From positions 204,724,001-204,788,000 of the forward strand of contig NC_042998.1 in the NCBI RefSeq assembly GCF_006345805.1: a DNA stretch of 64,000 bases. The letters are read 5' to 3'. This document shows, one piece after another, positions 7,382 to 61,257 of this stretch (positions are counted from its first letter, which is position 1; every line of letters begins with the position of its first letter). The notes below the pieces were generated by a model. The model was not told the DNA's origin. It saw nothing but the letters and a program-made list of their open reading frames with translations, and searched no databases. This DNA comes from Octopus sinensis. Its lineage: Eukaryota. Both the position numbers and the translations under genes were made by a program.

Positions 7382-7464
7382 ATAGACGCCATTGATTGGT
7401 TGAAATTGCAGAAGAAAAAACAGCAAATATCTTAGAAACTCTAGAATTTTCTGAATAAAGCCAA

Positions 7465-8290: not shown

Positions 8291-8325
8291 GGCAGAGTTG
8301 TCCGTAGTAGTGGTGACTGTGAAGC

Positions 8326-15253: not shown

Positions 15254-16004
15254 GTCAAAGCAATAAGAAAAATTCAGAAGATGAAAGGCCTTGCTCCATT
15301 CAACGAGCATCGATGAAACTACGGCAACCAAAACATTACACACAAAGTTATTTGTTTAAGCTAATCAATAAAATAGATATTGATAAATGGCAATATTTGC
15401 TGAAGAAGAAGAAGAAGAAGAAGAAATGTATAGTTTGTCATAATAGCTGTGCAGGGGGGGGGGGAACCAACAGAAACTAGATTTTCCAGCTGTTTTATTT
15501 GATGGTTGTGGAATTGCAGAAGACAGCCAACCTGTTGAGAGCAGTGGTGGGCCAGGGTGGGTTTATTAAATACTGGTTTGACACAACTAGTAAAGCCATG
15601 ATGGCACCAGATTGAAAATGGTGAGCGGCCAAAACTATGCTTCTTGCTCACAACCCCTCTCTCTCCACCACACACATTCTCTCTCAGTCTCTCTCTCTCT
15701 CTCTCTCACACATGCACACTCTTTCTCTTTCTCACACATAACATACATACTCCCCCCCCCACAAACCCACTTCCACACATGTAAACACATACATACACAC
15801 ACACTTCTGCACTTATGTAGGCACACACACACACACACACACACACCAATGTTAATACATTAACATTTGTTTATTCGTTTCAGTCATTTGACTGTGGCCA
15901 TTCACCCCAGTACATGACTGGTAAATTATCAACCAAAAAGGGTTGAAAGACAAAGTCCTTGTAGGATCTGAACTCAGAGCACAAAAGGTTGAAACAAATA
16001 CTGC

Positions 16005-16057
<53 letters not shown>

Positions 16058-16151
16058 CAACAACAATGATAATGATAATAATAATAATAATAATTAAAAA
16101 AATAATAAAAATAATAATAATGATAATAATAATAATAATAATAACAACAGC

Positions 16152-16189
<38 letters not shown>

Positions 16190-16203
16190 TGATGATGATG
16201 ATG

Positions 16204-16243
<40 letters not shown>

Positions 16244-16263
16244 TAATAAAAATAATAATAATG

Positions 16264-16294
<31 letters not shown>

Positions 16295-16338
16295 CAGCAA
16301 TAATAATAATAATAATAATAATAATGATGATGATGATG

Positions 16339-16386
<48 letters not shown>

Positions 16387-16396
16387 TAATAATAAT
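16005..16396. repeat. (AAT)n microsatellite with GAT/AAC interruptions
   Basis: direct reading; internal blocks recur. Confidence 0.95.
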
Positions 16397-16426
16397 GGAA
16401 GCATTTAAACAATTGCATTCAATGAA

Positions 16427-37322: not shown

Positions 37323-40300
37323 AGCCTTTGACGACTTGAAGCCTTTGACGAAGTAGAAGGGGATAGTGTATCACATGGGGTAGAGGACAACTGGACGTTT
37401 CTAAGGGACAACCTGCTGAGAGCCACTGACCAGATCTGTGGCTGGTGCAAAGTCCCCTCTCGTCCCAAGGTAACGTGGTGGTGGAACAGTGTCGTAGACA
37501 GGGCTATTAGAGAAAAGAGACAGACTTGGAAGCACTGGAAGAATGGTGGTAGCAGGGAATTGTATCAGACTGCTAAAAGGGAAGCTAGGAGACAGGTCTA
37601 TCTAGCCAGAGGGGAAGCAGATAAGAAAAAATTTGCCAATGTTCTGCGCCGTGAGGACCAAAGACTGGAGGTGTTTCGCGTTGCAAGACAGTGTGTGAGA
37701 GAGAATTGTGATGTGGTGGGAGAGAAGTGTGTTCGCATGGAAGATGGTTCACTTGCGCTAAACGAGGATGCAAAGAGAGAGGCTTGGAGATGCCACTATG
37801 AAAGGTTGCTGAATAAAGAAAATGAATGGGATAAAGAGAGTCTGCCGAACGTTGACCCAACAGAGGGACCAGCTATCAGGGTTGATAGTTCCTTAGTAGC
37901 TAAGGCAATTAGAAGCATGAAGACAGGGAAAGCCCCAGGCCCATCAGGTATCACTGCAGAGATGCTCAAAATATCTGGTAGTGTCGGCTATAGCCTAGTC
38001 ACCTGTATAGTTAATCAGGTGATACATGAAGGAGTCATACCCAATGACTGGTGTAGCAGCATAATAGTCAACTGCTACAAAGGTAAAGGTGATGCCCTAG
38101 ATACAAATAATTACAGAGGTATCAAGCTGTTGGATCAGGTGATGAAGGTTACAGAGAGGGTCATAAGCCAACTAATTAGAGAGAGAGTTAGTTTAGATGA
38201 GATGCAGTTTGGTTTCGTGCCAGGGAAAAGTACCACTGATGCTATATCCTGGTAAGGCAGCTGCAGGAGAAATACCTAGCCAAAGATAAGGCCATGTACC
38301 TGGCTTTTGTTGACATGGAGAAAGCCTTCGACAGGGTCCCCCGATCCCTCATATGGTGGTCAATGAGGAAACTAGGAATAGAAGAATGGTTAGTGAGAGC
38401 TGTGCAAGCCATGTACAGGGACGCTGCTAGTAAGGTGAGGGTTGGAAATGAGTACAGTGAAGAATTCCGGGTAGAGGTAGGGGTCCACCAAGGCTCAGTC
38501 CTCAGCCCCCTCCTATTTATCATAGTCCTCCAGGCAATAACGGAGGAATTCAAGACAGGATGCCCCTGGGAGCTCCTCTATGCTGATGACCTTGCTCTAA
38601 TTGCTGAGTCATTATCAGAACTGGAGAAGAAGTTTCAGGTGTGGAAGCATGGTTTAGAATCGAAGGGCCTTAGAGTCAACCTAGCTAAAACCAAAGTCGT
38701 AATAAGTAGGAAGGTAGACAAATCACAAACGCCTTCAGGTAGATGGCCCTGCTCGATCTGTAGAAAAGGTGTAGGTAGAAACTCTATAAGATGCACCAAG
38801 TGTAAGCTATGGACACATAAGAGGTGCAGCAATGTCATAGGAAGGCTAACTAGGAAGATGGTTTTTGTATGTGGCAGATGCTCGGGAGCATTAACCTCTG
38901 AAAATCTGCAGAAAACAATTTCCGTCACTTTCCAGGGGAAAAAACTAGAAGTGTTTGATAGCTTCCGTTATCTTGGTGACCAAGTCAGTAGTGGGGGTGG
39001 GTGTGCTGAAAGTGTAACGGCTAGAGTAAGAATAGCCTGGGCAAAGTTTAGGGAGCTCTTACCTCTGTTGGTGACTAAAGGCCTCTCGCTCAGAGTAAAA
39101 GGCAGACTGTATGATGCATGTGTACGAACAGCCATGCTACATGGCAGTGAAACATGGGCCGTGACTGCTGAGGACATGCGTAAGCTCGCGAGAAATGAAG
39201 CTAGTATGCTCCGTTGGATGTGTAATGTCAGTGTTCATAGTCGACAGAGTGTAAGTACCTTGAGAGAAAAGTTGGACCTAAGAGGAATCAGATGTTGTGT
39301 GCAAGAGAGACGATTGCGCTGGTATGGTCATGTGGTGAGAATGGATGAAGATAGGTGTGTGAAAAAGTGCCACACCCTGGCAGTTGAGGGGACCTGTGGA
39401 AGAGGTAGACCCAGGAAAACCTGGGTCGAGGTGGTGAAGCACGACCTTCGAACTCTAGGTCTCACCAAGGAAATGACCAGAGACCGAGACCTCTGGAAGT
39501 ATGCTGTGCGTGAGAAGACCCGGCAAGACCAGTGAGAACAATCAAAATCAAATCATATATCAGAAAGCAGGGGTTAAGTGACCCATCTGTTCGTGTTCGC
39601 TGTCAGCCTCGTCTGGCACCCGTGCCGGTGATACGTAAAAGCACCATTCGCTCATGGCCGTTTGCCAGCTCTGCCTGGCCCCGTGTCGGTGGAACGTAAA
39701 AGCACCATCTGTTCGTGTTCGTTGCCAGCCTCGCCTGGCCCCGTGCTGGTGACACGTAAAAGCACCGTCCGTTCGTGGCCGTTGGCCAGCTCTGTCTGGC
39801 CCCGTGTCGGTGGCACGTAAAAGCACCATCCGTTCGTGGCCATTTGCCAGCTCTGTCTGGCCCCGTGTCGGTGGCACGTAAAAGCACCATCCGTCCGTGT
39901 CCGTTGCCAGCCTCGGCTGGCCCCCGTGCCGGTGACACGTAAAAGCACCATCCGCTCGTGGCCGTTTGCCAGCTCTGTCTGGCAACCGTGTCGGTGGCAC
40001 GTAAAAGCACCATCCGTTCGCATCCGTTGCCAGCCTCGGCTGGCCCCCGTGCCGGTAACACGTAAAAGCACCATCCGTTCGTGGCCGGTTGCCAGCTCTG
40101 TATGGCCCCGTGTCGGTGGCACGTAAAAGCACCATCCGTTCGTGTCCGTTGCCAGCATCGCCTGGCCCCGAGCCGGTGACACGTAAAAGCACCATCCGTT
40201 CGTGGCCGTTCACCAGCTCTGTCTGGCACCCACTACACTCGCGGAGTGGTTGGCGTTATGAAGGGCATCCAGCCGTAGAAACACTGCCAGATCTGACTGG

Positions 40301-44225: not shown

Positions 44226-44660
44226 TATTTTACTAGTTTCATCTTGTCTCTTTGTTATCTCTCCGTGTTGATATATGGACAATTAAGGTGGTTTTAGAGT
44301 CAGATCATGGCTGCTATCTTCAGCATGGTGGTATCTCGTAGATACCCTAATTTATAATTTTAATAATTATTACCTTTGAGGGTTATTTTTTCCATGCTGA
44401 CCACTTGATAAAATCGTTATTTTATTTTAAATTAATGAACTTATCCTTATTTATATATATATATATATATATAAAAGGGAACCGGAGACTGGATTGTGTT
44501 TGAGTCCCCGAGAAACCACAGAGAATAAAGGAAGAGGGAGAGAGAGAGAGAGAGAGATGTAGGAACGAACCAAACCTCCTGCTGATAATTAGGAAAAGAG
44601 GAACAAAAGCCCAGTCGAAGCCGGAAGTTGTTTGTGTCAAAGAATCCAGCACAACCAGCA

Positions 44661-45131
44661 ATGTCTTCTGTCGCAGAACCCTCCAGCTCCGCTGCCAGTG
44701 ACTCTCCGAGTAAAGAAAGAGTTGAGGTGATGGCAAAAGCTGTGAACTTGATGGGCCAAAGTAAAAGAAATCTAATCTGTGGAGATGTTCCAATGGCTGT
44801 TACTCAATTTGAAGAATCTTGTCAAATTCTGGCCAAGTGCTATGGGGAGATGGCATTTGAATGTGCAGCTGCCTACTTCTCTTGTGGTCATGCCTTGCTA
44901 GAATTGGCCAGGCTGGATTTGAAAGTCATTGAAAGTCTTGAAGCTGAAGCAGCTGCTGCTGAAGAGGAGGAATTTTCCAGACACCCATTTTTATTAAAAT
45001 TTACCTTCAATTTAGCATTCTGCCTTTCTATCATTTTTCCTCGCCTATCATTTCTCCACGTGCGGTCAACACCCCCCCCACCATTTATTGATTTATATAT
45101 ATATCGTGCTAGCATGGAAAACGGACGTTAA
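44661..45131 (+). pseudogene. NASP: intronless NASP-like N-terminal fragment nested antisense in CCDC96 intron 3 (ORF open, status unknown)
   Basis: AVNLMGQSKRNLICGDVPMAVTQFEESCQILAKCYGEMAFECAAAYFSCGHALLELAR aligns with the NASP TPR1 region ([20 protein letters not shown]...[24 protein letters not shown]); similarity ends by about 44972; ETS-type CCGGAAGT at 44621-44628. Confidence 0.75.
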
Positions 45132-48315: not shown

Positions 48316-48973
48316 CTAAAAAAAAAAAAACAAGCATAAGAATTTTAAAAATTGGGCACAAATTTACATTCAATATTTTAAAACTTGTTTTTCTTTCTAC
48401 TTATTTCCTGCCTTCAGCCATTCTATCTCTTCTATCTCGCCCCCCCCCTTTTACCCTCAATTTTAATTGACCCTTTTTTAGCAATTAGGACCATCAATGG
48501 TCTCCTTATTTATTATTTCATAAAACGCTGATCGTTTTAAAAAGTGAAGAAACACGGGATTTCATCCTTTATATTTGCCCCTCTTATCTGCAGCCTGTGT
48601 ACAAACTGCAATGCTGCAGGGGCCCCTGGATGCAGATGTCTTCCAAAGACAAAAAAGAAATGAAGCTAGTATTTTCTGCTGAATGTGCAACATCAGTGTG
48701 CACGAATAAAGTATAAATATGTTGAGAAAAAAGAGAGAGAGAGAGAGAGAGAGAGTGGGGGAGCTGTGTAATGGTGGCGATGCCGTGGGGGGTTTTGTTA
48801 GAACATCAAAATCGAAGAAAGAAAATCGAAATGTCAATGAATAAAAAAAAACTCGCTAACACAACGCGTAGCTTTATTTTAAATAATATCTATGTATACA
48901 TCCATATTTTCTGTATATTATATCTTTGTAAAATATGTAATACATTCAAAAGCAATATTTTAAATAACAATAC

Positions 48974-48985
48974 CTCATCTGCCAT
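48974..48985 (-). CDS. CCDC96: CCDC96/CFAP184 coding exon 1 (MADE)
   Basis: ATG GCA GAT GAG followed by donor gtattg; phase 0 joins exon 2 in frame; lies in the promoter interval shared with the TK1-like gene. Confidence 0.65.
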
Positions 48986-49298
48986 CTTGTTGCTAAGGAA
49001 GCGAATGTTCGTTGTCAACAAAATACATACTCCACAGTAAAAGTTTCGTATTTGAGCAACCCAGACTTTAAGAATGTTGTTGTAATATCAGTGTTATTTT
49101 TTAATGTTATAAATAAAAATTAAAAACACAGAAACGAATTTTTATAAGTGCGTGTTCTGAAGCGAGCGCTAATTTCAGCTTAAAAACAATCCGGGTCAAA
49201 GTTCAATTCGTTTGGCGGGTAATTAAAAATCAGTTTCAAAAAAGTCGGTGCTTCTTCCGCCTCTTCCTCATTAAACGTCCAGAACCGTTTTGCTCAAA
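48986..49298. promoter_or_regulatory. bidirectional promoter between CCDC96 and TK1-like
   Basis: 313 bp between divergent ATGs; X-box-like GTTGCTAAGGAAGC 48989-49002, forkhead-like GTCAACA 49014-49020, E2F-like TTTGGCGGG 49211-49219, CHR-like TTTGAA (minus) 49235-49240. Confidence 0.7.
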
Positions 49299-49343
49299 AT
49301 GCTCTCTTTGGAAGGAAATCAGAGCAAAAGAGGGGAAATTCAG
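49299..49343 (+). CDS. TK1: TK1-like exon 1 (MLSLEGNQSKRGEIQ)
   Basis: ATG in AAAATG context, RGEIQ matches TK1 RGQIQ, gtaaat donor, phase 0. Confidence 0.85.
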
Positions 49344-49778
49344 GTAAATTATTTATATTTTACTAAACTGTTTTATCCAAACTTAACCCAAAGTTTTTAA
49401 TGTCGAAAAAATAATTTGTAACGAACTTTTCAAACTTTGCCACGATGACATTAATTTCAATGCTTGGAAATAATCTGCTTAGGCGAATGAGACTTTTACG
49501 TAAGAAAAACCTATTATAAACATAAAAATGCTCGAATAAGTTCAATTAAAATTCTTTTTCTTCCTCTATATCTTATAATTAATAAATTATTTGTCAAAAC
49601 CGAAATTGTTCTGAAGCAAGTCTGAACACCGACTTCATGAAAATATATCTCGGAAGAGACAGAAATATATAGGAAAAACTAAATATCTAATTTTGATATA
49701 AAAACTATATTTCTACAGGTTAATGTTGTTGGTGTTAAGAAACCCCGTCAACCACCTACCTGTCTGTCTATCTCTCTT

Positions 49779-49832
<54 letters not shown>

Positions 49833-51894
49833 GCACCTCTCTTTGAAAAAGGGTTTTCGAATACCTAAGCTTTAGATATTAGACATTACGAATATGCAAA
49901 AAAAAAAAAAAAAAAAAAACCCGCCCCATTGATTTTGTTTACCTTAAAGAGATCGTAGCAAATCGACAAACATCTACAAATCGAAATTAAATATCGATAA
50001 AAACATTAGAGTGGAAAGGATTTGCGTTTTACTTGTGTTTGCCTTAAATAACCGTAAATATAAATTAGATATGTTTCAGCACACGAACTCGGGTCAAGTC
50101 ACTTGCTATGCAAATACATCTCCGTAAATGTAAACCATTCTATGAGAAACAAACGTTAATATGTTTAATAATTACTGTTATAAAGTTTAATAAGGGCCTC
50201 AAATTTCACCCCATCTCCAATTTTAAATTTTTAACTATTTATTTGTCTGTCTATCCCTATCCGTTTATTCATATCTATCTATATATGGCGAAGGTAAAGA
50301 ATACGCACACCACTCTGAGAGTGGATGTTTTTTATGCTCCAGCAGCACAGGAGCCAGTTGGGTAGGCCTGGCTTTGATCACGTTCGATGGTGCTTTTTAC
50401 ATGCCATTGGCACGGGGAGCTAGTCAGGAGGCACTGGCCACAGCTATGATATTGGTTTTACTTGACTCAACAGGTCTTCTCAAGCATATCATATCACACA
50501 AACGCATTAGGGGTCCTCGTAACTGGGCCGGACATGTGTGGCGGTAATCTCACTTTAGTTGCTGGGTCCTCTCAATCACAGCATATCCCCAAAGGTCTCG
50601 GTCTCCCGTCATTCATCGTCATCATTTAACGTCTGCTTTCCGTGCTAGCATGGGTTGGACGGTTTGGCTGAGGTCTGGTTAACCAGATGGCTGCATCAGG
50701 TTTCAGTCTGATCTGTATTGTTTTCTACAGCTGGATGCCCTTCCTAACGCCAACCACTCCGAGAGTGTAGTGGGTGCTTTTTACGTGCCAGCAGCACGAG
50801 GGCCAGTTGGGTGGTACTAGCAACGGCCATGCTCAAATGGTGCTTTTTATGTGCCACCTGCACAGGAGACAGTCCAGTGGCACCGGCAATGACCTCGCCA
50901 ATCAAAAATCAAAATTAGAATATCAATCAATTCAAAATGAAAATTGGAAATTCTAGTTGTGGCTGATGCCAGTGTCATCTGACTGGATCCCGTGCTGGTG
51001 GCACGCAATAAGCACCATTCATGCGTGGGTCGTTGCCAGTGCTGCCTGAATGGCTCCCTGTGCCAGTAGCACGTAAGAGGCATCATCTGAACATGGTCGA
51101 TGCCAGCCCTCCTGCCCTGTCTGGCTCCTATGTCAGTAATACATAGAAAGCACCATCTGAACATGGCCGATGCCAGTGCTGCCCGACAGGCTTCTGTGCT
51201 GGTGACACATAAAAAGCACCCACTACAGTCTCAGAGTGGTTAGTGTTAAGAAGAGCATCCAGCTGTAGAAACCTTGCCAGATCAGATTGGAGCCTGGTGC
51301 AGCCTCCAGGCTTCCCAGATCCCAGTCGAACCATCCAACCCATGCCAGCATGGAAAACAGATGTTAAACGATGATGATTATATATATTTTCACTCTGTAT
51401 TTCTCTATATTGCTTTTTTATATGTCACTAGCAGCTAAGCCCAGTTTCACCCGGTCTGTTTGGATGATGCGGCTGTGATCATTTGCGGTTAGGCATAATC
51501 TATAACAGCGTTTGTCAACCTTATCATTTCGGGTCCCCTGTTTCAATTGGAGCCTCCAACTATATGAAAATTTCCTAACCCCACCCCGTCAGAAAACAGC
51601 TTCTAAGCAACTGGTTGTTTTAGTGGCAGAAGAAAGAGGGAAATTCCATTAGAAACAGTCTTAATCAATTCTCTTGGTAAGTATGGGAGTTAGGAAAAAA
51701 ATACAAACTGTATTCCAATCTATGCACCCATCTCCACATGTGTGCCATTTTTCACGCGAATCCACCCAGCCGTTTGGCTGTGAACCTCAAGACAAGAAAG
51801 AATTCAACGATTGCCCACGTTCAATTTATATTATAGATTTTATATTTCTTACCAGTTCATCATTTTTGTATTAATTGAATCTGGTGTTTTTCAG

Positions 51895-51926
51895 GTGATA
51901 ATTGGTCCCAAGTTGAGCGGAAAAAC
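51895..51926 (+). CDS. TK1: TK1-like exon 2, P-loop (VIIGPKLSGKT)
   Basis: tttttcag acceptor, gtaagt donor, 32 nt; corresponds to TK1 VILGPMFSGKS. Confidence 0.9.
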
Positions 51927-53974
51927 GTAAGTTCAACAACAACATTGATTTCATTCTGAGCTTCATCACGTCCCTTGGTCACATCTTTTGCATCAGTTTG
52001 TTACATTGGACAGCTAATCCTCTCCTCCTCTTCTTTCTCTTTTTCTTCCTCAGCAGAAGATACAATACAACATACTAGTAGACAAATAGTTGTACTGTTG
52101 GTGGTCTATAAAGGTCGATTAAATAAGTACCAATTATGCACTGGGGTCGATGTAATCGACTTAATCCATTTGTTTGTCCCCTCTGTGTTTAGCCCCTTGT
52201 GGGTAGTAAAGAAATAGGTCTATAAATGTTTGTCTGTCAGAGGGAATATTGTGTGTGTGTGTGTAGCTGTTGCAACATTAATCTGTTTACCTGGGAAACG
52301 GCCCTCATCATGTGACTAGTAGGCGTGTGTGTCTGTTTGGTGGTTGGCGATTATTCATAATTCATGGAATATTTTGTGACTCTGAAAGGGAATGTTGGTT
52401 GTGATTACAACCAGGTCTATTTTTTTATTTTATCTAGTTTCAGCCCACGAGCTGTGGCCATGCTTTTTAACACTTTTCTTGAGAAACACATTGTTTCAAT
52501 TCATTTCAAAAATACTGAAGAATATAATGAAATATCTTGTTTATCAAACTCGGTGACTGGCATCCGTTGCTAGTGGAGCGCTAAGAGTACCATACGAGTG
52601 AGATCGTTCCCAGAGCAACAAGCTGGCCTCCATGCCGATGGCACGTTAAACACACCATTCGAGCGTGATCATTGCCACGTCACCTTACTAGCACTTGTGC
52701 TGGTGGCATGTGAAACATTTGAGCGATGTTGTTGCCAGTGCCACTGGACTGGCTCCTGTGCAGGTGGCACATAAAAAGCACCATTTGAGCGTGACCGTTG
52801 CCAGTACCACCTAACTGGCCCTCGTGCTGGTGGCACGTAAAAGCACCCACTACACTCTCGGAGTGGTTGGCGTTAGGAAGGGCATCCCGCTGTAGAAACT
52901 CTGCCATATCAGATTGGAGTCTGGTTCGCCAGACCTCAGTCAAATTGTCCAACCCATGCTAGCATGGAAAGCAGACGTTAAACGATGATGATGATGATTT
53001 TAGCAGTGGTTTGAAACATTTACCTCCTGACTCTCTCATCTCTATTACAGTGAAATTTGTTTTGCTAAGGAAGTCTAATTAGATTGAAGTATGCCTAAAG
53101 TTGTCTCCCATTATTTACTGAAACAATTAGAATTATTTTAGTTATTGAGCTAATGTTGTCTTTTCTTTATCCTCACTTAACATCCACAGACAGAATTTGT
53201 CAAGGCAGATTTTCAGCGTTTGGCTGCCCTTCCACAGAAGGCTGGAAATGAACAACCTCGCTTGTATGATGGTGATGTTCATTTACAGCCATCACGTGGG
53301 GTCGAGAGAAGAAGACCCCCAACTCACAGACATGCACATACCTTTTATCTTTTACTTGTTTCAGTCATTGGACTGTGGCCATGCTGGGGCACTGCCTTGA
53401 AGGGTTTAGTCAAACAAATCAGCCCCAGTATTTACTTTTATTTGTTTTCTTAACTTTGGTACTTATTCTATTAGTCTCTTTTGCCAAACTGCTAAGTTAC
53501 AAGGACACACACACACAATGAGCTTTTTCAGTTCCGTCTGCCAAATCCACAAACAAGGCTTTTCAGTCAGCTTAGGACACACGACACTTGTTCCACACAC
53601 CCTGCAGCAGGACTGAGCCATGGTTGGGAAATTAATTCTTTAACCACATCTCTACCTTACTGTATAATTATGGATTACCACTCCATAAAATACATCCACC
53701 ATAATTATTTCTCTCCATTTAGCATGCAAAGGTGTATGGCCCTTATTGGCTCCATCAACACAAGATTTGGCTTGTTCATTTCCCCCCGACTAGGTGACAC
53801 CTTGAGCATGGCCCTTCATTTCACTGTTCTCCAGTTCTGGTGGTTCTCTGTCCTTGTAGCTGTGACTTTATGGATGTTTCACAAAGTCAAGGATGAGCAG
53901 ATTGGAAACATGTTTGTGTCTTCTCATTACACCATTAAGACAACAAAAGTTCCAACTATTGCAAGGGATGTAGT

Positions 53975-54186
53975 TTAACCCTTTAGTGTTCACATTATTC
54001 TGCCAAAATTTTTATCCACATTGCCTTGAACTAATCAGGCATTAATCTTGTAGCTATGAGATTTTGATGAGGTACCTGTTAATTTTTAGAATGATATTGT
54101 AGAGTTGGTGTGAAAGACCAGATGTGGCCAGTTTGAACATAAAACAGGCAGAATACTTTTGGCTGGTTTAAATGCTAAAGGGATAA
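53975..54186. mobile_element. piggyBac-type MITE
   Basis: TTAA|CCCTTTAG...CTAAAGGG|ATAA. Confidence 0.65.
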
Positions 54187-55133
54187 ACAGCAAGGCACAG
54201 GTGTGGCTGTCTGGTAAGAAGCTTGCTTCCCAACCACGTGGTTTTGAGTTCAGTCCCAATGTGTGACACCTTGGGCAAGCGCCTTCTACTACATAACCTG
54301 ACCAAGACATTGTGAATGGATTCGGTAGACAGAAACTGAAAGAAGCTGGTTGTGTGTGTTTTTCTCCACGTTTTCACATTAGACAATTGTTGTAAATGAA
54401 TGTGATTCATCTCCAACATTCTGTGGAAAACATGTTTGGCCATGTGGGATGTATTTCCTTGCTTGGTAACTGGTGAGGGCTAGCAACAGGAAGGGCATCC
54501 AGCCATAGGAAATCTGCCTCAATAAACTCCATCTGACCCATGCAAGCATGGAAAAGTGGGCATTAAAACAGTGATGAAAATCACATTATATATGTGTGTG
54601 TGTGTGTATCACCATTTAACATCTGTTGTCTATGCTGGCATGGGTTGGATGGCTTGACAGGAGCTGGTAAGGTCAGAGAGCTGTATCGTGCTCCCATTGT
54701 CTGTTTTGGCATGGTTGCTATGCCTGGATGCCCTTCCTACTGACAACCACATTACAAAGTACACTGGGTGCTTTTTATGTCACACCAGCTTGGGAGCTTT
54801 TTGTGTGGTGCCAACACTCATGAGCTCACAAGACAAGGACCTCTCAGGAGAGAGAAGGAATGAAACAGAGATTAGAGTACAATAGTGGGACAGAGGTAAC
54901 CCTCTTACTAGAGAGGAAATATTTGGCTACTTCAGCAGGACAAGGAAGATGGGAGAGAGACAGAGGGAGGGCTTGGCTTCAGGGAACAGTGTGGGGTAGT
55001 AATAATATTAGAGAAAGGACAGAGGGGGTGGTGCCCCATAAGTGTGTGAAGGAAGATGTGTAGATATGCATATATTCCTCTATGTGTATATTAAAGCAGT
55101 ATTTATTCACTTTTTTTTTTTTTCTATTTTCAG

Positions 55134-55211
55134 AACTGAACTGAATCTTCGCATTCAAAGGTACAAGATTGCTCAATATCGCTGCTTTCTCATAGAACAG
55201 GACTCGGAAAG
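55134..55211 (+). CDS. TK1: TK1-like exon 3 (TELNLRIQRYKIAQYRCFLIEQDSER)
   Basis: ttttcag/gtaatt, 78 nt, phase 2 to 2; aligns to [21 protein letters not shown]. Confidence 0.9.
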
Positions 55212-55433
55212 GTAATTAACCAGCTTTAACATCATCCACCCGGTTTTTTTTTTTTATGTACCTTGTTTGCATGGGTTTGATGGGTTTTCTGCCACATGTG
55301 GTATGTTGTCATCATCGTCATCATTCCCTTAACCCCCCCCTCCTTTCTGTCCAGACTCAGCCTGTCGCTTTTGCCCCCCATTCTTATTTGTCTTTTATCG
55401 TGACACAGCGAAACTGTTCTTTTCCACTTTCAG

Positions 55434-55524
55434 ACTGATTGATCAGACGAAAAGAAAACCACTGGAGACTTACTTGGAACTTGCTGATCAATACGACGTG
55501 ATTGGTATTGACGATGGACATTGT
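55434..55524 (+). CDS. TK1: TK1-like exon 4 (LIDQTKRKPLETYLELADQYDVIGIDDGHC)
   Basis: ctttcag/gtaagt, 91 nt; VIGIDDGHC aligns to VIGIDEGQF. Confidence 0.9.
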
Positions 55525-56099
55525 GTAAGTAGGAATGATTGTTGGGTGAAACCACTTGCTTGCTGCTTAACCCTAGGTCAGACCCTGAATGAGTAATTAT
55601 TGAAAATATATGTTGGCAATATGTCAGGAAGAAAATCTTGTTTTGTGTTGTGCTGCTTTTATGAAGGAAGAAAAGAGCAATATGGATTTTGTGTGTCTTG
55701 TTATACAGGAATCACGTACTGTCATCACAATACATAGGCATACACACAGGCTATATAATGTGCATTTCTAAGTTTATCTCTGGACATTTTCTATAGAATT
55801 CAGAGCCAGCATCGCAAATTACTATGTTTCATATATGAATACGTCCATGTAAATAATGTGATTGAAGACAGAAAGCTAGGTGATGGGTGTATATGCATAT
55901 TTTAGGCGTAATTGCCCTTTCCTCAGTGGCACATTCAACGAATTAGGTATATGACCCAACAATAATAACTCTTTGCTAGTGGGCCATGGTGCTCCATATA
56001 TGACGAAAAGATTTCACCAGGTGGTGCTATTAAGTTAGATATGGCCTAGGCCAATATTGGCTGAAACCTATCAAAGTATGTGTGTCTGTGTGTGTATAT

Positions 56100-57120
56100 A
56101 TATATATATATATTGTCATCGCCGTTTAACGTCTGCTTTCTATGCTGGCATGGGTTGGACGGTTTGACTGGGGGCTGGCAAGCCAGACGGCTGCACCAGG
56201 CTCCAATCTGATCTGGCAAAATTTCTACAGCTGGATGCCGTTCCTAACACCAACCACTCTGAGAGTCTAGTGAGTGCTTTTTTATGTGCCACCAGCACAG
56301 GAGCCAGTCAGGCAGGCCTGGCATCGACCACTCTTGAATGCTGCTTTTAACGAGCCACTGGCATGGGAACCAGTCAGCTGGCACTGACAATGATCATGCT
56401 CAAATGGTGCTTTTAACGAGCCACTGGCATGGGTGCCAATCAGGCGGCACTGCCATCAGCCACGACATCGGCCTCGCCTCAATAGGTCCTCACAAGCGCA
56501 GTTCACTGTCTAATGATTGAAGGGCACTCTTGAATGGGCTGGTTATGCTGCACCGGCATAAGCCACAGTTACGGTCCAGCCTGGCCCACCAGATCCTCTC
56601 AAGCACAGTACACCTTCAAAGGCCTCGGTCACTCGTCATTCCCTCAGTTAGGCCCAACGCCTGAAGATCACACTCCACCATCGCATCCCCCGTCCTGCAG
56701 GGTCCACCTCTTCCACAGGCTCCCTCAACCGCTAGGGTGTGACACTCCTTCACACAGCCGTCCCCATCCATTAGCAACAAATGACCACACTAGCGTAGTT
56801 GTCTCTCCTGCACACCACATTTGATACTTCCCAAGTACAAGCCCTCTCTCAGGGTGCCCACACTCCGTCTTGCATGCACACTGACGTCACACATCCAGTG
56901 GAGCATATCGGCTTCACTCCTTGCAAGCCCACGCATGTCCTCAGCAATCACAGCCGATGTTTCACTGCCACGTAGCAGGGCTGTTCACACACATGCGTCA
57001 TACAGTCTACCTTTTACTCTGAGTGAGAGGTCTCTGAACTTTGCCCAGGCTATTCTTATTCTTGCAGCTACACTTTCGGAGCATCCACTCCTGCCACCGA
57101 CTTGTCACCCAGGCAACGGA
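56100..57120 (-). mobile_element. RTE LINE 3' fragment(s), antisense in TK1-like intron 4
   Basis: reverse complement of RT C-terminus (RIRIAWAKF..., LHGSET) and 3' UTR. Confidence 0.75.
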
Positions 57121-57663
57121 TGCTATCAACTACTTGCATATATATGTATAAGACCCATCAAGCCAAGCAAAATCTGTCACGGCAGATACTGGTGCCACGC
57201 AAATGGCATGTAAAGGCACCCATTACTCTGGCATTAAGAAGGGCATCCAGCCATAGAAAACCACACCAGATCAGACTGGATCCTGGTGCAGCATGCCAGC
57301 ATGGACCTTAAATGATGATGATAATGTGTTTGTCTGTATATCATCATCATCGTTTAACGTCCGCTTTCCATGTAGCATGGGTGGGACAATTTGACTGATG
57401 GCTGCACCAGACTCCATTCTTATCTGGCAGAGTTTCTACAGCTGGATGGTCTTCTAACGCCAACCATTCCGAGAGTGTAGTGAGTGCTTTTATGTGCCAG
57501 TCAGGCGGTACTGGCGACGACCTTGCTCGAATCTCTTTACACATGCCACCGGCACAGGTGTCAGTAAGGCAATGTTGGTAACGATCACGCTCGAATGGTG
57601 CCCTTTTATGTGCCACTGGCATGGAAGCCAGTTGGCTGCTCTGGCAATGATCATGCTTGGATG

Positions 57664-57706
<43 letters not shown>

Positions 57707-58146
57707 TATACACTGACATGTCCATACACATCACGCATGCACTCCTTTGGCAACTTTTAGCTCCCTTGGAAACAAATGAATGTTGGTGACAGGAAGGGCA
57801 TCCGGCTGCTAAAAATCTCCACAGACTTTGTCTGAATTATGCAGACATAGAGAGCTGGACATTAAAATGATAATGATGTGATTGAAGGAGGTTTTAGCTT
57901 GTGATGGCATGGGTGGATTGTCGCATGGGGAATAAAATGTATTGTAGCTTTTAATAACATCTTTTTGTTTTGAGTTCAAATCCTGACCATAATTTCCAGA
58001 TTGTCTGTCAATATTGGGTGTTTCTATTCTCATCTCTCCCCACCCCTCTCTCTCTCTATCCTTTCCTCCAACTTCCTCCTCTCTCTCTTCTCTTCTTCCT
58101 ACTCTCTCTCTCTCTCTCTCTCTCATTGCTCTTTTTTTAATTCCAG

Positions 58147-58236
58147 TATGACGCCGTTGCATCTTTTTCCAATGACTTGGCTGACAAAGGTAAAACTGTA
58201 ATCGTTGCCGGACGTGACTCTACCCACCTGAAGAAG
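58147..58236 (+). CDS. TK1: TK1-like exon 5 (YDAVASFSNDLADKGKTVIVAGRDSTHLKK)
   Basis: ttccag/gtaaca, 90 nt; GKTVIVA motif. Confidence 0.92.
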
Positions 58237-59455
58237 GTAACAGCTGCACTTAGATCTCTTCTTATTACTAAAATGGGGGAGCTAACAGTAGTTTGGTGGG
58301 GTTTTTTTTTTTACTTTCAATAACCTGAAGTCAGGGGGCACAGCTGCCATGACTGTTTTCAGGGTCTCTGAGACAGGTTGGAGGGGTAAGTTGTTGTTAA
58401 ACCACCAGAGATCAGGTTTGGATGTTTATTACTGCTGGTGCCATGTATAAAGCATCCAGTCCACCCTGTAAAGTGGTTGGTATCAGGAAGGGCATCCAGC
58501 CATAGAAATCTTGCCACAATAGATGACTGGGGCCTGGTGCAGCTCCTGTTGAACCGTCCAACCCATGCCAGCATTGAAAACATGTTAAATGATGATGGTT
58601 TCTTCAAGCTAGCAGAACTAACAATGGAATGGGTTTTTTTGTTTTTTTTTTGTAAATTTCTTCATTTGTATGTTATTGAAACAGTTGTCTCCCCTTGTGG
58701 ATGTCTTCTGTACATTTTAGGTATGGGTCCTTCGCACAGCCACACAGACTGTGTCTTATGTCTTGTACAGGATTACAAAACTATAATTCCTTTTGTAAAT
58801 ATTGAACTCACTCACACCTGCCAGGTTAGCCATTGTGTCTCTAGTAAGGTTTGAACACATGTCCATGTAGTGAGCCAGTTAGTGCTGTTATCTTGGGCCA
58901 GCATATTTCATTGAGATCCAGTTTAATTGGAAATCAAATAGAATTGGGGTTTGCAAAACTAAACCCTTTGTTTTATATCAAGGAGGTCTGCAAAGAGAAC
59001 ATGTGAATAAGAAAGGGATTATGCAGTGTGGTACATTTACTTGTGAGTACTTCCACCCTCGCTCAGAGAGTGGAACTACTCACAATAATAATAATAATAA
59101 TAATCATCGTTTAACGTCCGGTTTCCATGCTAGCATGGGTTGGACAGTTCGGCCAGGGTCTGGGAAGCCAGGAGGCTGCACCAGGCTCCCGTCTGATCTG
59201 ACTGTTTCTACAGCTAGATGCCCTTCCTGACGCCAACCACTCCGTGAGTGTAGCGGGTGCTTTTTACGTGCCACCGGCACAGGTGCCAGAGGAGGCTGGC
59301 AGCGGCCACGATCAGTTGGTGCTTTTTACGTGCCACCAGCACATGATAATAATAATAAACATCTTTTATCACTAATGTAAGATTATCAACCAACTTAAGC
59401 TGAACTGCTGATGCTTATCTCTTTTGTTAATCTGTTCTTGTCTTCACTTCAACAG

Positions 59456-59575
59456 GGTTACCCGGGTATCTTATCCTTAATCTCACATGCTGAAAGGGTA
59501 GACAAACTGTCTGCTGTCTGCGTTTATTGCTCACAGAATGCCTCTTTCACTCATTTTCGGGACTCAGAATCTCAG
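59456..59575 (+). CDS. TK1: TK1-like exon 6 (GYPGILSLISHAERVDKLSAVCVYCSQNASFTHFRDSESQ)
   Basis: caacag/gtaaaa, 120 nt; AExVxKLxAVCxxC motif with first Zn-ligand pair. Confidence 0.92.
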
Positions 59576-60912
59576 GTAAAATGTTTCTTTTTCTTCCACT
59601 CATTTCAGTCATCTGACTGTGGCCATGCTGGGGCACAACCTAGAGGAATTTTAGTTGAAGGAATCAACTTCAGTACTTGTACTTTTTAAAGTCTGGTACT
59701 CATTCTATCAGTCTTTTTTGCTGAACTGCTAAGTTACAGGAATGTAAACACACCAACACTGGTTGTCAAGCACTGGTGGGAGACAAACAAGGACACACGG
59801 ACACACACGATGGGCTTCTTTCAGTTTACAGTTCCCAAATCTACTCACAAGCCTTTTGTATGGCCTGAGGCTATAGTAGAAGACACTTGCCCAAAATACC
59901 ATGCAGTGGGCCTGAACTCAAAACTCTGTGGGTGGAAAGCTAGCTTCTTACCACACAGTCACAAATTTTTTATTTTCATAAAGTTAAAGAATTTTCCTAA
60001 ATTATTTTTGTTCAGGTTTCCTGATATTTTTTTTACCTCTAGTATGTGACCCACTGAAGAATTAGTTTGGCATCAAAGAATGCTTTTGTTATCAGTGCCT
60101 TTACCATATTTGTTTGTAGTAAATGATTTTTACATCCTTATTAAAAACTTCCGTTTTCATTGCCCCCTTATTCTGGTGTAGGTTGTAGGCACAGAGTTCT
60201 CAAACTTGCCCTTCCAGAAGTTCCTTAGCAAATGTTCCAGATAGATTCTCAACCAAAACCTAATCTGACCATCTCACTAATGGCTGACCTCTAAGTCTCC
60301 TCCAGTTCGCTTTTCTGCGATTCTGTCCTCAGTTTCTTTGTTTTGTTCTTTAACCATTTACCCAAAGAGTGATTGGTGTAACTTGAACTGAAGGTTTGTA
60401 GCTCAGAGACGAGGAAGGCATTCCCGGCCAAGCTGCTGCCTTTTTTACGCAAACAGGTCGCATTTTCTGTTCTACGACACGTGCAGGTTGAATACTTCTT
60501 TCTGTCTGTTTTCCCTGCTGGCATGGGTTGGATGGTTTGACAGGAGCTACACTAGGTTCCATCGTCTGTTTGGCATTTTTCCTACAACTGGATGCTTTTC
60601 CTCACCCCCAAACACTTCCGTGTGGATGGGATGCTTTTTACATGGCAACAGCATCAGTATGTTTGTGTTTTGTTTTTGTGACACCAACCCCAGCACTTTT
60701 TACGTGGCACCATGATGAATGTTTTAAAAGAAAGACACTTTGTGTCATGGATTCAAGGGGGTCTTTGGTTAACCTGAGAGAATTAAGACCAAATTTGGTA
60801 AGATGTAACAGGATTCACCAGCTTGATGTCCCTTAACTAAATGAGGCTAATTTGGAGGTGCCCCAATTAACTAATTAGTTATCGTAATTACTTTATTAAT
60901 TACTGGTTCCAG

Positions 60913-61257
60913 GTTCAAGAAGACCATTCCGGCTTCTCCAAGCACTATGAACCAGTGTGTCGAAGATGTTTCAAGTTACCTCATCAGTCTCTCACTTCAA
61001 GATCTGCCAAATCTCCACATGAATCTTTTACTCCAAGACGTCCATTGAAAGAAAACTTCAAAGAGAATGTCACACCACTTCTGGAACATTCAACTGCAGA
61101 GATACCAGTTGTTACTAAACCATCACCTCTGGTACCTAAGGTTACTAAACCATTGGATCCAGCTCCTGTTCCTGCTCAAGACGAGACATTTAGCCCACCA
61201 CCATTGGCTAACTTCAAAACTACTGTAAATAGAAACAAATTATTCAGTAGTCCATAA
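60913..61257 (+). CDS. TK1: TK1-like exon 7 (VQEDHSGFSKHYEPVCRRCFK... Pro-rich tail, stop)
   Basis: ttccag acceptor; YxxVCRxC second Zn pair; frame open to TAA at 61255-61257. Confidence 0.9.
   Translation, partial: VQEDHSGFSKHYEPVCRRCFKLPHQSLTSRSAKSPHESFTPRRPLKENFKENVTPLLEHSTAEIPVVTKPSPLVPKVTKPLDPAPVPAQDETFSPPPLANFKTTVNRNKLFSSP

What the first reader, a model, noticed from the sequence alone, without database searches (positions are those of the whole stretch)
49299..61257. Intact TK1-family gene with a rebuilt active site: candidate pseudo-thymidine-kinase or neo-specific kinase
Seen: 7 GT-AG exons splice into one open 266-aa frame. Compared with remembered human TK1 motifs: P-loop GPMFSGKS becomes GPKLSGKT; KYAKDTRY becomes EQDSER; DEGQF becomes DDGHC at 55510-55524 (catalytic base Glu98 to Asp, Gln100 to His, base-stacking Phe101 to Cys); ALDGTFQRKPF becomes GRDSTHLKKGY; TKR becomes THF; lasso IGGADKY becomes DHSGFSKHY. 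Retained: Walker A Lys, Walker B Asp, both Zn pairs (CVYC, CRRC) and the lasso Tyr. Established: these motifs are highly conserved in TK1-type enzymes, and Glu is the catalytic base. Inference: fold, Zn and nucleotide-binding residues are kept while acceptor-site residues change, with no stops across 12 kb. That fits a selected protein that has lost thymidine kinase activity or acquired another substrate or a scaffold role.
Basis: partly seen in the sequence, partly recalled or inferred. Interest (0 to 1): 0.88.

Follow-up and report, generated by a model that had tools for sequence, protein, structure and literature searches.

The report
Octopus thymidine kinase with rebuilt active site
Octopuses keep one intact, selectively maintained copy of the DNA-precursor enzyme thymidine kinase 1, but the residues that bind and activate thymidine in other organisms have been replaced, so it probably no longer does the standard job.

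Summary
Seven GT-AG exons (49299-61257, + strand) splice into an 801-nt frame of 266 aa. It matches Pfam TK (PF00265) full length (E 1e-30) and folds like human TK1.

It is the octopod orthologue of TK1, not a paralogue or pseudogene. Octopus vulgaris, O. bimaculoides and Argonauta hians carry the same derived motifs (DDGHC, AGRDST, deleted STHD hairpin). No canonical TK1 was found elsewhere in this 2.7-Gb genome.

Among 61 columns at least 90% conserved in 86 other eukaryotic TK1s, it departs at 25; the others have a median of 1 and a maximum of 8. The octopod stem branch is about 8 times the median tip.

The gene is under purifying selection. dN/dS between Octopus and Argonauta is 0.25 (core 0.15-0.17; p = 1.5e-16). 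The splice pattern is preserved in retrocopies in two lineages.

The P-loop, Walker B Asp, four Zn cysteines, a KEN box and a conserved C-terminal motif are retained. The lasso and the donor-side loop are remodelled and vary among octopods.

Most likely it is a cell-cycle-regulated, nucleotide-binding TK1 derivative that has lost efficient thymidine phosphorylation. A Dm-dNK-like kinase elsewhere could supply salvage. Loss of activity is inferred, not shown.

The parts
49299..49343 (+). Exon 1 (ATG; MLSLEGNQSKRGEIQ), donor GTAAAT
   Evidence: 100% identical in O. vulgaris L017. Joined to exon 2 in the C14 retro-fragment.
51895..51926 (+). Exon 2 (32 nt, phase 2): P-loop GPKLSGK(T), from 51904
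   Evidence: The GxxxxGK[ST] motif is intact. Met21Lys is specific to the O. vulgaris group.
55134..55211 (+). Exon 3: helix TELNLRIQRYKIAQYRCFLIEQDSE(R). The DSER loop replaces KDTRY.
   Evidence: The exon 2/3 and 3/4 junctions are reproduced exactly in the C14 retro-fragment.
55434..55524 (+). Exon 4: shortened segment replacing the STHD beta-hairpin, then Walker B strand VIGIDDGHC (GIDDGHC = 55504-55524)
   Evidence: This is the only G[IV]DDGHC site in the genome, and there is no G[IV]DEGQF site.
58147..58236 (+). Exon 5: helix plus strand GKTVIVAGRDSTHLKK (replaces GKxVIVAALDGTFQRK)
   Evidence: DLADKGK.VIVAGRDST is identical at 16 of 17 positions in Argonauta. This exon is skipped in O. 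bimaculoides isoform X2.
59456..59575 (+). Exon 6: GYPGIL..., first Zn pair CVYC (59519-59530), THFR (59549-59560) in place of TKRL
60913..61257 (+). Exon 7: lasso VQEDHSGFSKHY (60913-60948), second Zn pair CRRC (60958-60969), two KEN boxes (61048-61056, 61060-61068), conserved C-terminal motif ETFSPPPLANFKTTVNRNKLFSSP (61183-61254), stop TAA
   Evidence: The lasso tip has pLDDT below 50.
49211..49241 (+). Possible promoter elements: E2F-like TTTGGCGGG (from 49211), with a TTTCAAA (CHR-like, about 49234-49240) downstream, about 60-90 nt upstream of the ATG
   Evidence: Present in O. vulgaris; no strict match in Argonauta. Weak evidence.
48971..48985 (-). Start codon (MADEV, GT donor) of the head-to-head neighbour gene, of the CCDC113/CCDC96 family. 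The intergenic promoter region is about 310 bp.
   Evidence: The start motif is conserved in Argonauta L015, which supports orthology of the locus.

Best explanation
This is the single-copy octopod orthologue of cytosolic thymidine kinase 1.

Shown:
- It is a real seven-exon gene, and its mRNA is spliced as predicted.
- It has been held open by purifying selection since before Octopus and Argonauta diverged.
- It keeps the TK1 fold, the ATP-phosphate-binding P-loop and Walker B Asp, the structural Zn(Cys)4 site, a KEN-box degron and a conserved C-terminal motif.

Also shown:
- The elements that hold and activate thymidine in other TK1s are substituted. These are the transition-state Arg60, the catalytic base Glu98, the hydrophobic thymine pocket (Met28, Phe101, Leu124, Phe128, Phe133) and Arg165.
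- The STHD hairpin is deleted.
- The base-reading lasso is lengthened by two residues and varies between octopods.

Inferred:
- The protein still binds a nucleotide at the P-loop and is still produced and destroyed with the cell cycle.
- It no longer works as an efficient thymidine kinase. It is a pseudo-enzyme, or at most a weak enzyme, serving a non-catalytic or regulatory role linked to proliferation.
- Thymidine and BrdU salvage in octopus is carried by a Dm-dNK-like multisubstrate deoxynucleoside kinase encoded elsewhere in the genome.
For: - Gene model and family.
- Fold: AF2 core pLDDT above 90; Foldseek top hits are TK1 structures, human 1xbt with target-normalised TM 0.86-0.89.
- Orthologues with the same derived motifs in O. 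vulgaris, O. bimaculoides and Argonauta. Argonauta has the same seven-exon structure, and the head-to-head neighbour start motif is conserved there.
- Outlier status: 25 of 61 conserved columns changed, against a median of 1 and a maximum of 8 in 86 other TK1s. Stem branch 2.66 substitutions per site against a median tip of 0.33.
- Selection: dN/dS 0.25 overall, 0.15-0.17 in the alpha/beta core, 0.13 in the last 24 residues. pN 0.28 against pS 0.64, Fisher p = 1.5e-16.
- Expression and splicing: a processed retro-fragment of exons 1-4 on C14 and a young intact retrocopy in Argonauta with exactly the seven exon blocks.
- Sole copy: human and scallop TK1 queries find only this gene and its retro-fragment. 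The back-translated G[IV]DEGQF pattern has 0 hits, and G[IV]DDGHC has 1 hit, which is this gene.
- Residue roles: Glu98 is the base, Arg60 acts on the transition state, Asp58 contacts the 3'-OH, and Phe101/Phe133/Arg165/Tyr181 stack on the base (PMC8757434; PMC9190010; PMC7694900).
- The lasso and DSER loop are modelled at pLDDT below 50. A scallop TK1 folded with the same alignment is at least 84 there. The lasso is only 43% identical between Octopus and Argonauta, and the Tyr is lost in Argonauta.
- Erosion is continuing inside Octopus: Met28-to-Lys and deletion of AK.
- Alternative salvage: a dNK-family gene on C1 has an intact P-loop, ERS motif and LID, and best matches Drosophila multisubstrate dNK at E 2e-26.
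Against: - No biochemical data exist, so loss of activity is inference from sequence.
- Glu-to-Asp is conservative. DDGQFF occurs in otherwise near-canonical single-domain TK1s (P0130, P0150).
- Each lost arginine is followed by a basic residue at +1 (E51-R52; F146-R147, Lys in Argonauta), so a register shift could rescue phosphate contacts.
- The substituted pocket-floor residues (D79, H81, C82, R105, S107, Y114) are themselves conserved between Octopus and Argonauta. That fits a site still in use as well as a structural constraint.
- BrdU is incorporated by O. vulgaris brain cells (PMC6082961), and this protein has not been excluded as the kinase responsible.
- The own-genome search scores only the best candidates exon by exon, so absence of a second TK1 is strong but not absolute.
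Confidence: 0.5

Rival explanations
1. It is an active kinase with a new specificity. The P-loop and Walker B still transfer phosphate, Asp79 acts as the base, and the re-tiled polar or cationic pocket floor (His81, Cys82, Arg105, Ser107, His109, Tyr114) binds an acceptor other than thymidine.
For: - The P-loop, Walker B Asp, Asp58-equivalent (Octopus) and Zn site are conserved in all octopods.
- The substituted floor residues lie in the two best-conserved stretches between Octopus and Argonauta: DQYDVIGIDDGHCYD at 15/15 and DLADKGK.VIVAGRDST at 16/17.
- Core dN/dS is 0.15-0.17.
- The KEN box is kept, so the protein is still tied to the cell cycle.
Against: - The lasso that covers and reads the acceptor differs strongly between Octopus and Argonauta and is modelled with low confidence.
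- The transition-state Arg60 and Arg165 are both replaced.
- The hairpin next to the Arg60 loop is deleted.
- The conserved strands are also core beta-strands, so fold constraints alone could explain their conservation.
Confidence: 0.27
2. It is still an ordinary thymidine kinase that tolerates unusual residues. The sequence looks odd but the function is unchanged.
For: - BrdU labelling works in O. vulgaris (PMC6082961).
- Asp-for-Glu occurs in other TK1s.
- Basic residues lie at +1 of both lost arginines.
- The gene is the only TK1 in the genome.
Against: - 25 of 61 near-invariant positions are changed. Nine of them are 100% invariant in 86 other TK1s: Met28, Phe29, Arg38, Arg60, His68, Glu98, Phe101, Leu124 and Arg165 equivalents.
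- The hydrophobic thymine pocket has become polar or charged.
- The rate within octopods is several-fold higher than in other molluscs: the Octopus-Argonauta path is 1.15 against 0.55 between two bivalves.
- A Dm-dNK-like kinase can account for BrdU labelling.
Confidence: 0.13
3. It is a paralogue, and a canonical TK1 exists in octopods but is missing from assemblies or annotations.
For: The own-genome search is exon-by-exon and scores only the best candidates. Assemblies of 2.7 Gb contain gaps.
Against: - Human and scallop TK1 queries, plus a motif pattern with a positive control, find nothing else.
- Profile searches returned only the derived form from three other annotated octopod genomes, while canonical TK1s of six other molluscs were returned.
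- The gene has seven exons in both Octopus and Argonauta, and the start of the head-to-head neighbour is conserved, as expected of one orthologous locus.
Confidence: 0.05
4. It is a decaying pseudogene or a chance or annotation artefact.
For: Evolution is very fast and catalytic residues are lost. An exon-5-skipped isoform model exists in O. bimaculoides.
Against: - The frame is open, with canonical splice sites, in four species.
- dN/dS is 0.25 with p = 1.5e-16.
- The C-terminal motif and KEN box are conserved.
- By contrast, the true retro-fragment on C14 is frame-broken.
Confidence: 0.02

Closest known systems
Human cytosolic thymidine kinase 1 (TK1; PDB 1XBT, 1W4R, 2ORV) and canonical animal TK1s
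   Same: - Full-length Pfam TK domain.
- Alpha/beta P-loop domain plus Zn-lasso fold (target-normalised TM 0.86-0.89).
- About 40% identity.
- GxxxxGK[ST] P-loop, Walker B Asp and four Zn cysteines.
- C-terminal KEN box and a terminal (R/N)KLF motif.
   Different: - Arg60 to Glu, Glu98 to Asp, Gln100 to His, Phe101 to Cys, Leu124 to Arg, Gly126 to Ser, Phe128 to His, Phe133 to Tyr, Arg165 to Phe.
- The roughly 12-residue STHD hairpin is deleted.
- The lasso is 2 residues longer and lacks the IGG motif.
- Met28 to Lys in the O. vulgaris group.
- The tail is about twice as long.
Inactive TK1 domains of tandem thymidine kinases (Trypanosoma brucei domain 1; Giardia intestinalis part 2)
   Same: A TK1-derived module that lacks residues needed for catalysis yet is retained. 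In T. brucei it stabilises the protein and raises substrate affinity of the active domain (PMC9190010). Unnamed tandem TKs in metagenomes even show DDGHH or DDGHT in their degenerate second domain.
   Different: Those domains are fused to an active TK1 domain in the same polypeptide. The octopus protein is single-domain, keeps the Zn site and P-loop, and no active TK1 partner was found in the genome.
Drosophila multisubstrate deoxynucleoside kinase (Dm-dNK) / TK2-type kinases
   Same: They provide thymidine salvage in animals without relying on TK1. An octopus gene on C1:86.557-86.570 Mb has intact dNK motifs and best matches Dm-dNK.
   Different: It is an unrelated fold and family (PF01712). 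It is relevant only as the probable substitute activity, not as a relative of the window gene.

Membership tests
TK1-type thymidine kinase (Pfam PF00265, EC 2.7.1.21) | Full-length match to the family profile above the curated cut-off | tested here: met
   107.3 bits against a cut-off of 20.6, profile positions 1-176 of 176.
TK1-type thymidine kinase (Pfam PF00265, EC 2.7.1.21) | Alpha/beta P-loop domain plus lasso domain fold | tested here: met
   AF2 core pLDDT above 90. Foldseek top 46 hits are eukaryotic and poxviral TK1 structures, probability 1.0. The lasso tip is modelled at low confidence.
TK1-type thymidine kinase (Pfam PF00265, EC 2.7.1.21) | P-loop GxxxxGK[ST] and Walker B Asp (ATP phosphate and Mg binding) | tested here: met
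   G19-P-K-L-S-G-K25-T26 and D78, conserved in all four octopod sequences.
TK1-type thymidine kinase (Pfam PF00265, EC 2.7.1.21) | Four cysteines of the structural zinc site (human C153, C156, C185, C188) | tested here: met
   C134, C137, C168 and C171 are invariant.
TK1-type thymidine kinase (Pfam PF00265, EC 2.7.1.21) | Catalytic base Glu98 | tested here: not met
   Asp79 in all octopods. Glu is 100% conserved in 86 other TK1s of the alignment. Role from PMC8757434 and PMC9190010.
TK1-type thymidine kinase (Pfam PF00265, EC 2.7.1.21) | Transition-state Arg60 and 3'-OH-binding Asp58 in the KDTRY loop | tested here: not met
   Asp is kept in Octopus (D49) but is Gly in Argonauta. Arg60 is Glu51 in Octopus and Val in Argonauta; an Arg follows at +1.
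TK1-type thymidine kinase (Pfam PF00265, EC 2.7.1.21) | Hydrophobic thymine pocket and base-reading lasso (Phe101, Leu124, Phe128, Phe133, Arg165, Tyr181, VEVIGG) | tested here: not met
   Cys82, Arg105, His109, Tyr114 and Phe146. Tyr164 is kept only in Octopus. The lasso is 2 residues longer and not conserved.
TK1-type thymidine kinase (Pfam PF00265, EC 2.7.1.21) | Thymidine phosphorylation activity | not testable with these tools
   Needs an enzyme assay or complementation.
Pseudo-enzyme of the TK1 family (as in the inactive domain of tandem TKs) | Lacks residues required for catalysis while under purifying selection | tested here: met
Pseudo-enzyme of the TK1 family (as in the inactive domain of tandem TKs) | Fused or partnered with an active TK1 domain | tested here: not met
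   The protein is single-domain, and no other TK1 was found in the genome.
Pseudo-enzyme of the TK1 family (as in the inactive domain of tandem TKs) | Demonstrated lack of catalytic activity | not testable with these tools
   Needs biochemistry.
Decaying or processed pseudogene | Frame disruptions, loss of introns or dN/dS near 1 | tested here: not met
   Seven introns, an open frame in four species and dN/dS of 0.25. The C14 retro-fragment shows what decay looks like.

The most novel reading that the evidence does not exclude
Without any gene duplication, octopods converted their only TK1 into a different cell-cycle-regulated P-loop enzyme. A newly fixed polar and cationic pocket floor (Asp79, His81, Cys82, Arg105, Ser107, Tyr114) would phosphorylate, or bind in an NTP-dependent way, a substrate other than thymidine. 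Thymidine salvage would have been handed over to a dNK-type kinase.
Probability: 0.25. Interest if true: 0.78.

Novelty: new variant of a known kind. Interest (0 to 1): 0.6.

Why it matters
TK1 is among the most conserved salvage enzymes, and its active-site motifs are nearly invariant from protists to humans. Lineages usually either keep it unchanged or lose it. Here an animal clade has kept the single orthologue under selection, with its nucleotide-binding loop, zinc site and cell-cycle degron, while dismantling the thymidine site. Inactive TK1 modules were so far known only as domains fused to an active TK1 in parasites.

If confirmed, this would be a clean natural case of orthologue-to-pseudoenzyme (or neo-enzyme) conversion. 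It could be used to ask what TK1 does besides making dTMP.

It also has a practical side. BrdU, EdU and nucleoside-analogue labelling in octopus, widely used to study neurogenesis and regeneration, would depend on a dNK-type kinase rather than TK1. That may affect labelling efficiency and its interpretation.

Tried and rejected
- A Pfam TK search of the own genome at default thresholds found nothing, not even the window gene, because exons are scored singly. I replaced it with protein queries and back-translated motif patterns with a positive control.
- O. bimaculoides coding DNA could not be fetched; neither isoform is on record. dN/dS therefore rests on Octopus-Argonauta, where dS of about 1.4 is partly saturated, and on the very close O. 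vulgaris pair, with 3 nonsynonymous and 4 synonymous changes (p = 0.05).
- I could not find squid, cuttlefish or Nautilus orthologues. The representative search and the profile search gave no other cephalopods. A search restricted to the C-terminal tail found only Octopus. The age of the change beyond the Octopus-Argonauta ancestor is therefore unknown.
- TARA protein P0018 looked like a possible cephalopod intermediate (GYP, CFKLP, NDGQRF). The tree places it with canonical TARA P0016 (88/79 support) and not with octopods, so I treat it as an independent case.
- E2F/CHR promoter elements: an E2F-like site is present in Octopus only, with no strict match in Argonauta. I treat this as weak evidence.
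- RNA editing as a rescue is rejected. None of 11 canonical residues is reachable by A-to-G changes.
- Literature: no paper on an octopus or cephalopod TK1 peculiarity was found. The BrdU/EdU mentions counted for eLife PMC8384421 are not in the held text. The T. brucei tandem TK paper PMC3366807 is not held.
- Pseudogene and chance-ORF readings are rejected on selection, splice and orthologue evidence.

Full report
**Observation**

Reading the region directly shows seven exons on the + strand: 49299-49343, 51895-51926, 55134-55211, 55434-55524, 58147-58236, 59456-59575 and 60913-61257. Every intron begins with GT and ends with AG after a pyrimidine tract. The exons join into an 801-nt frame of 266 codons ending in TAA.

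The product matches Pfam TK (PF00265) over the whole profile (E 1e-30, 107 bits against a cut-off of 20.6). Its best solved relative is human TK1 (1xbt, E 9e-29). GIDDGHC, for example, lies at 55504-55524.

**Origin of the window**

The window lies at C2:204724001-204788000 of a 2.72-Gb, 13,516-contig assembly. The protein is 98% identical to 'thymidine kinase, cytosolic-like' of Octopus vulgaris, and introns are about 95-96% identical to that species. The genome is therefore an Octopus very close to O. vulgaris. From memory the assembly statistics fit O. sinensis, but I did not test that.

**Orthologues**

The homology search returned O. vulgaris (98%), two isoform models of O. bimaculoides, and Argonauta hians at 50% (BLASTP; 53-54% in alignments). 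All of them share:
- DDGHC in place of DEGQF.
- AGRDST in place of AALDGT.
- Loss of about 12 residues that form the STHD beta-hairpin.
- GY in place of xF before the helix after strand 4.
- All four Zn cysteines.
- A KEN box, and a strongly conserved C-terminal motif (FSPPPL..K.TVNR.KLFS.P).

O. vulgaris and Argonauta have the same seven-exon structure. A head-to-head neighbour (CCDC113/CCDC96 family) starts about 310 bp upstream on the other strand, and its start motif is conserved in Argonauta. This is one orthologous locus, and the change predates the Octopus-Argonauta split.

**How unusual it is**

I aligned 86 other eukaryotic single-domain TK1s with the octopod sequences. In the 61 columns that are at least 90% conserved among those 86, the window protein differs at 25. 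The other sequences differ at a median of 1 and at most 8.

Nine positions that are 100% invariant elsewhere are changed or deleted, namely the equivalents of human:
- Met28, Phe29 and the first Arg of the LxRR helix.
- Arg60 and His68.
- Glu98, Phe101, Leu124 and Arg165.

Canonical TK1s of bivalves, gastropods, a nemertean, a crinoid, a rotifer, a tardigrade, an insect and a copepod all read GPMFSGK, KDxRY, STHD, DEGQFF, AALDGT[FY]Q, FT[KR]R and EVIGGxDKY.

Among 213 single-domain hits, DEGQF occurs 154 times. DDGHC occurs only in the four octopod entries. In an ML tree the octopod stem is 2.66 substitutions per site against a median terminal branch of 0.33. The Octopus-Argonauta path (1.15) is about twice the path between two distantly related bivalves (0.55).

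**Is there a canonical TK1 elsewhere in the genome?**

- Whole-genome searches with human TK1 and with scallop TK1 found only exon 6 of this gene and one fragment on C14.
- A back-translated pattern for G[IV]DEGQF has no match in 2.7 Gb.
- The analogous pattern for G[IV]DDGHC has exactly one match, in this gene, which serves as a positive control.
- Profile searches returned canonical TK1s from six other molluscs, but only the derived form from the three other octopods.

The gene is therefore very probably the only TK1 of octopods. The caveat is that the own-genome tool scores only the best candidates, exon by exon.

**Selection and expression**

Between the window gene and Argonauta, dN = 0.34-0.37 and dS = 1.4-1.8 (dN/dS 0.21-0.25; 0.38 by LWL85). 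The proportion of nonsynonymous differences is 0.28 and of synonymous differences 0.64 (Fisher p = 1.5e-16).

| Region | dN/dS |
|---|---|
| Alpha/beta core | 0.15-0.17 |
| Zn/lasso part | 0.23 |
| Middle of the disordered tail | 0.5-0.9 |
| Last 24 residues | 0.13 |

Against O. vulgaris there are 3 nonsynonymous and 4 synonymous changes plus one codon deletion. Exon divergence is 0.9% against about 2.5% mismatches in the longest aligned intron block.

The C14 fragment (C14:8073339-8073497) is a truncated processed copy of exons 1-4. It is frame-broken by a 16-nt deletion and a 7-nt insertion, and it joins exons 2/3 and 3/4 exactly at the predicted junctions. Argonauta carries a very young intact retrocopy that matches its seven exon blocks at 100% in the coding part. 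The mRNA is thus spliced as predicted and was present in the germ line in both lineages. A decaying pseudogene is excluded.

**What is kept and what is lost**

Residue roles are taken from the literature:
- Glu98 abstracts the 5'-OH proton, Arg60 stabilises the transition state and Asp58 binds the 3'-OH.
- The thymine is held by main-chain atoms of Phe128, Val172, Val174 and Gly176, and is stacked between Arg165/Tyr181 and Phe101/Phe133.
- Met28 constrains the 5' position.
- Cys153/156/185/188 bind zinc, and a KEN box at 203-205 directs APC/C-Cdh1 degradation.
- Sources: PMC8757434, PMC9190010, PMC7694900.

Kept in all octopods: GxxxxGK[ST], the Walker B Asp, the four cysteines, the KEN box and the terminal KLF motif shared with human and mollusc TK1.

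Changed in all octopods:

| Human TK1 | Octopod |
|---|---|
| Arg60 | Glu or Val |
| Glu98 | Asp |
| Gln100 | His |
| Phe101 | Cys |
| Leu124 | Arg |
| Gly126 | Ser |
| Phe133 | Tyr |
| Arg165 | Phe or Leu |
| STHD hairpin | deleted |
| Lasso | 2 residues longer, without IGG |

The O. vulgaris group shows further erosion: Met28 to Lys, and deletion of the AK of AKDSER. O. bimaculoides and the old retro-fragment still have the ancestral state at both sites; Argonauta keeps only the Met.

AlphaFold2 models the core at pLDDT above 90, but the DSER loop (51-55) and the lasso tip (152-160) fall below 50. A scallop TK1 folded with the same alignment is at least 84 throughout and shows the hairpin strands. 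Foldseek confirms the TK1 fold. A-to-I editing cannot recreate any of 11 canonical residues.

**Interpretation**

The pattern is asymmetric. The floor of the acceptor pocket on the alpha/beta domain was replaced once and has since been conserved: DQYDVIGIDDGHCYD is identical at 15 of 15 positions and DLADKGK.VIVAGRDST at 16 of 17 between Octopus and Argonauta. The roof (lasso) and the DSER loop that replaces KDTRY differ between octopods, and the lasso Tyr is lost in Argonauta.

The nucleotide-binding loop and the degradation tail are well conserved. I therefore think the protein most likely still binds a nucleotide and is still cell-cycle regulated, but is no longer an efficient thymidine kinase. 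I put this pseudo-enzyme or weak-enzyme reading at about 0.5.

The main rival is an active kinase with a new acceptor, supported by the conserved, now polar and cationic, pocket floor (about 0.27). An essentially normal thymidine kinase is less likely (about 0.13) but not excluded, for three reasons:
- Asp-for-Glu occurs in otherwise near-canonical TK1s (P0130, P0150).
- Basic residues lie one position after both lost arginines.
- BrdU is incorporated by O. vulgaris brain cells (PMC6082961).

The BrdU result does not need this protein. The genome encodes dNK-family kinases with an intact P-loop, ERS motif and LID (C1:86.557-86.570 Mb and C5:25.61 Mb). The C1 gene best matches the multisubstrate Drosophila dNK (E 2e-26), which by established knowledge phosphorylates thymidine.

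**Comparison with what is known**

By sequence and fold this is a member of the TK1 family, but it fails the family's catalytic definition at Glu98, Arg60 and the thymine pocket.

Inactive TK1 modules are known as the N-terminal domain of the T. brucei tandem enzyme and the second part of the Giardia enzyme (PMC9190010). Unnamed tandem TKs in metagenomes show DDGHH or DDGHT in a degenerate second domain. All of these are fused to an active domain.

I found no report of a free-standing, single-copy, selectively maintained derived TK1 in an animal. I class it as a new variant of a known kind.

**Limits**

- No activity or expression data could be examined.
- dS to Argonauta is partly saturated.
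- Positive and relaxed selection on the stem cannot be separated.

Noticed in passing
G000:C14:8073339-8073497 (loci L001, L006, L011/L012): A truncated processed retro-fragment of exons 1-4 of the window gene. It is 82% identical across the alignment with gaps counted (about 94% within the aligned blocks), has a 16-nt deletion and a 7-nt insertion, and its frame is broken. It preserves the ancestral P-loop Met and the AK of AKDSER, which dates those two changes to after the retroposition.
   Followed up: yes
L016:2941 to beyond 4300 (Argonauta hians BAAFZT010000011.1), parent gene L015:3001-11482: A very young, intact, intronless retrocopy of the Argonauta TK1-like gene. Its CDS is 100% identical to the spliced parent, and it lies inside a gene with an Autophagy_act_C domain. 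The identical protein is recorded on 5 contigs, so there may be several copies.
   Followed up: partly
L018:396-1181 and L019:427-1212 (TARA Oceans metagenome contigs; protein P0018): A second, apparently independent derived TK1 from an unknown planktonic eukaryote. It reads GVNDGQRF and SALDATSQ, has a shortened hairpin and lasso, and keeps the Zn cysteines. It groups with a canonical TARA TK1 (P0016), not with octopods.
   Followed up: partly
Proteins P0008, P0013, P0017, P0011, P0014 (JGI/Logan metagenome contigs): Tandem two-domain TK1 proteins. The first domain is canonical. The second lacks the Zn cysteines and reads DDGHH, DDGHT, DDGEK, DDAQN or DNVEK at the catalytic strand. They probably come from protists, resembling the trypanosome and Giardia arrangement.
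   Followed up: no
window 50.4-51.4, 52.6-53.0, 54.4-54.8, 56.0-56.5, 57.2-57.7, 58.4-58.6, 59.1-59.4, 60.4-60.7 kb; also 13.9-14.5, 27.0-27.4, 29.4-30.0, 30.8-31.3, 39.6-40.2, 45.4-45.9 kb: One interspersed repeat family recurs on both strands. Its conceptual translations recur, for example LTSVFHASMGWTV...GKPGGCTRLQSDLA.FLQLDALPNANHS.SVVGAFYVPPAQ. It fills much of the TK1 introns and accounts for the patches of 82-89% identity to O. vulgaris in the intron alignment.
   Followed up: no
window 37332-39535 (+): A non-LTR retrotransposon remnant. It has a reverse transcriptase (RVT_1, E 1e-22) split over two frames, followed by a weak PHD/C1-like zinc-finger match (below Pfam cut-offs).
   Followed up: partly
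window 48971-48985 (-) and upstream; L017:1-2688; L015 around 2690: A head-to-head neighbour gene of the CCDC113/CCDC96 coiled-coil family starts with MADEV about 310 bp from the TK1 ATG, which implies a shared bidirectional promoter. The start motif is conserved in Argonauta.
   Followed up: partly
window 7295-8670 and 15852-16418: Long low-complexity tracts. One is triplet and GC-rich repeats reading as poly-Pro/His/Thr/Gly in all frames; the other is ATT/AAT-type repeats. They produce spurious long ORFs.
   Followed up: no
window 44589-45131 (+): A 180-aa open frame (MSSVAEPSSS...AKCYGEMAFECAAAYFSCGHALLELARLDL...). By eye it resembles the N-terminal TPR-like part of the histone chaperone NASP. 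Pfam gave no hit.
   Followed up: partly
O. bimaculoides proteins P0002 and P0003: The annotated isoforms either skip exon 5, removing 30 residues that include strand GKTVIVAGRDST, or read through after exon 6. If real, they would not fold as TK1. They may be minor or aberrant transcripts.
   Followed up: no
G000:C1:86557718-86569510 (-), G000:C5:25614851-25617973 (+), G000:C12470:41810-42190 and G000:C9061:300536-300916: Members of the dNK family in this genome:
- A Dm-dNK-like gene with intact motifs on C1.
- A second paralogue on C5.
- Intronless 279-aa frames on two small contigs that, by eye, look like the NDUFA10 type.
   Followed up: partly
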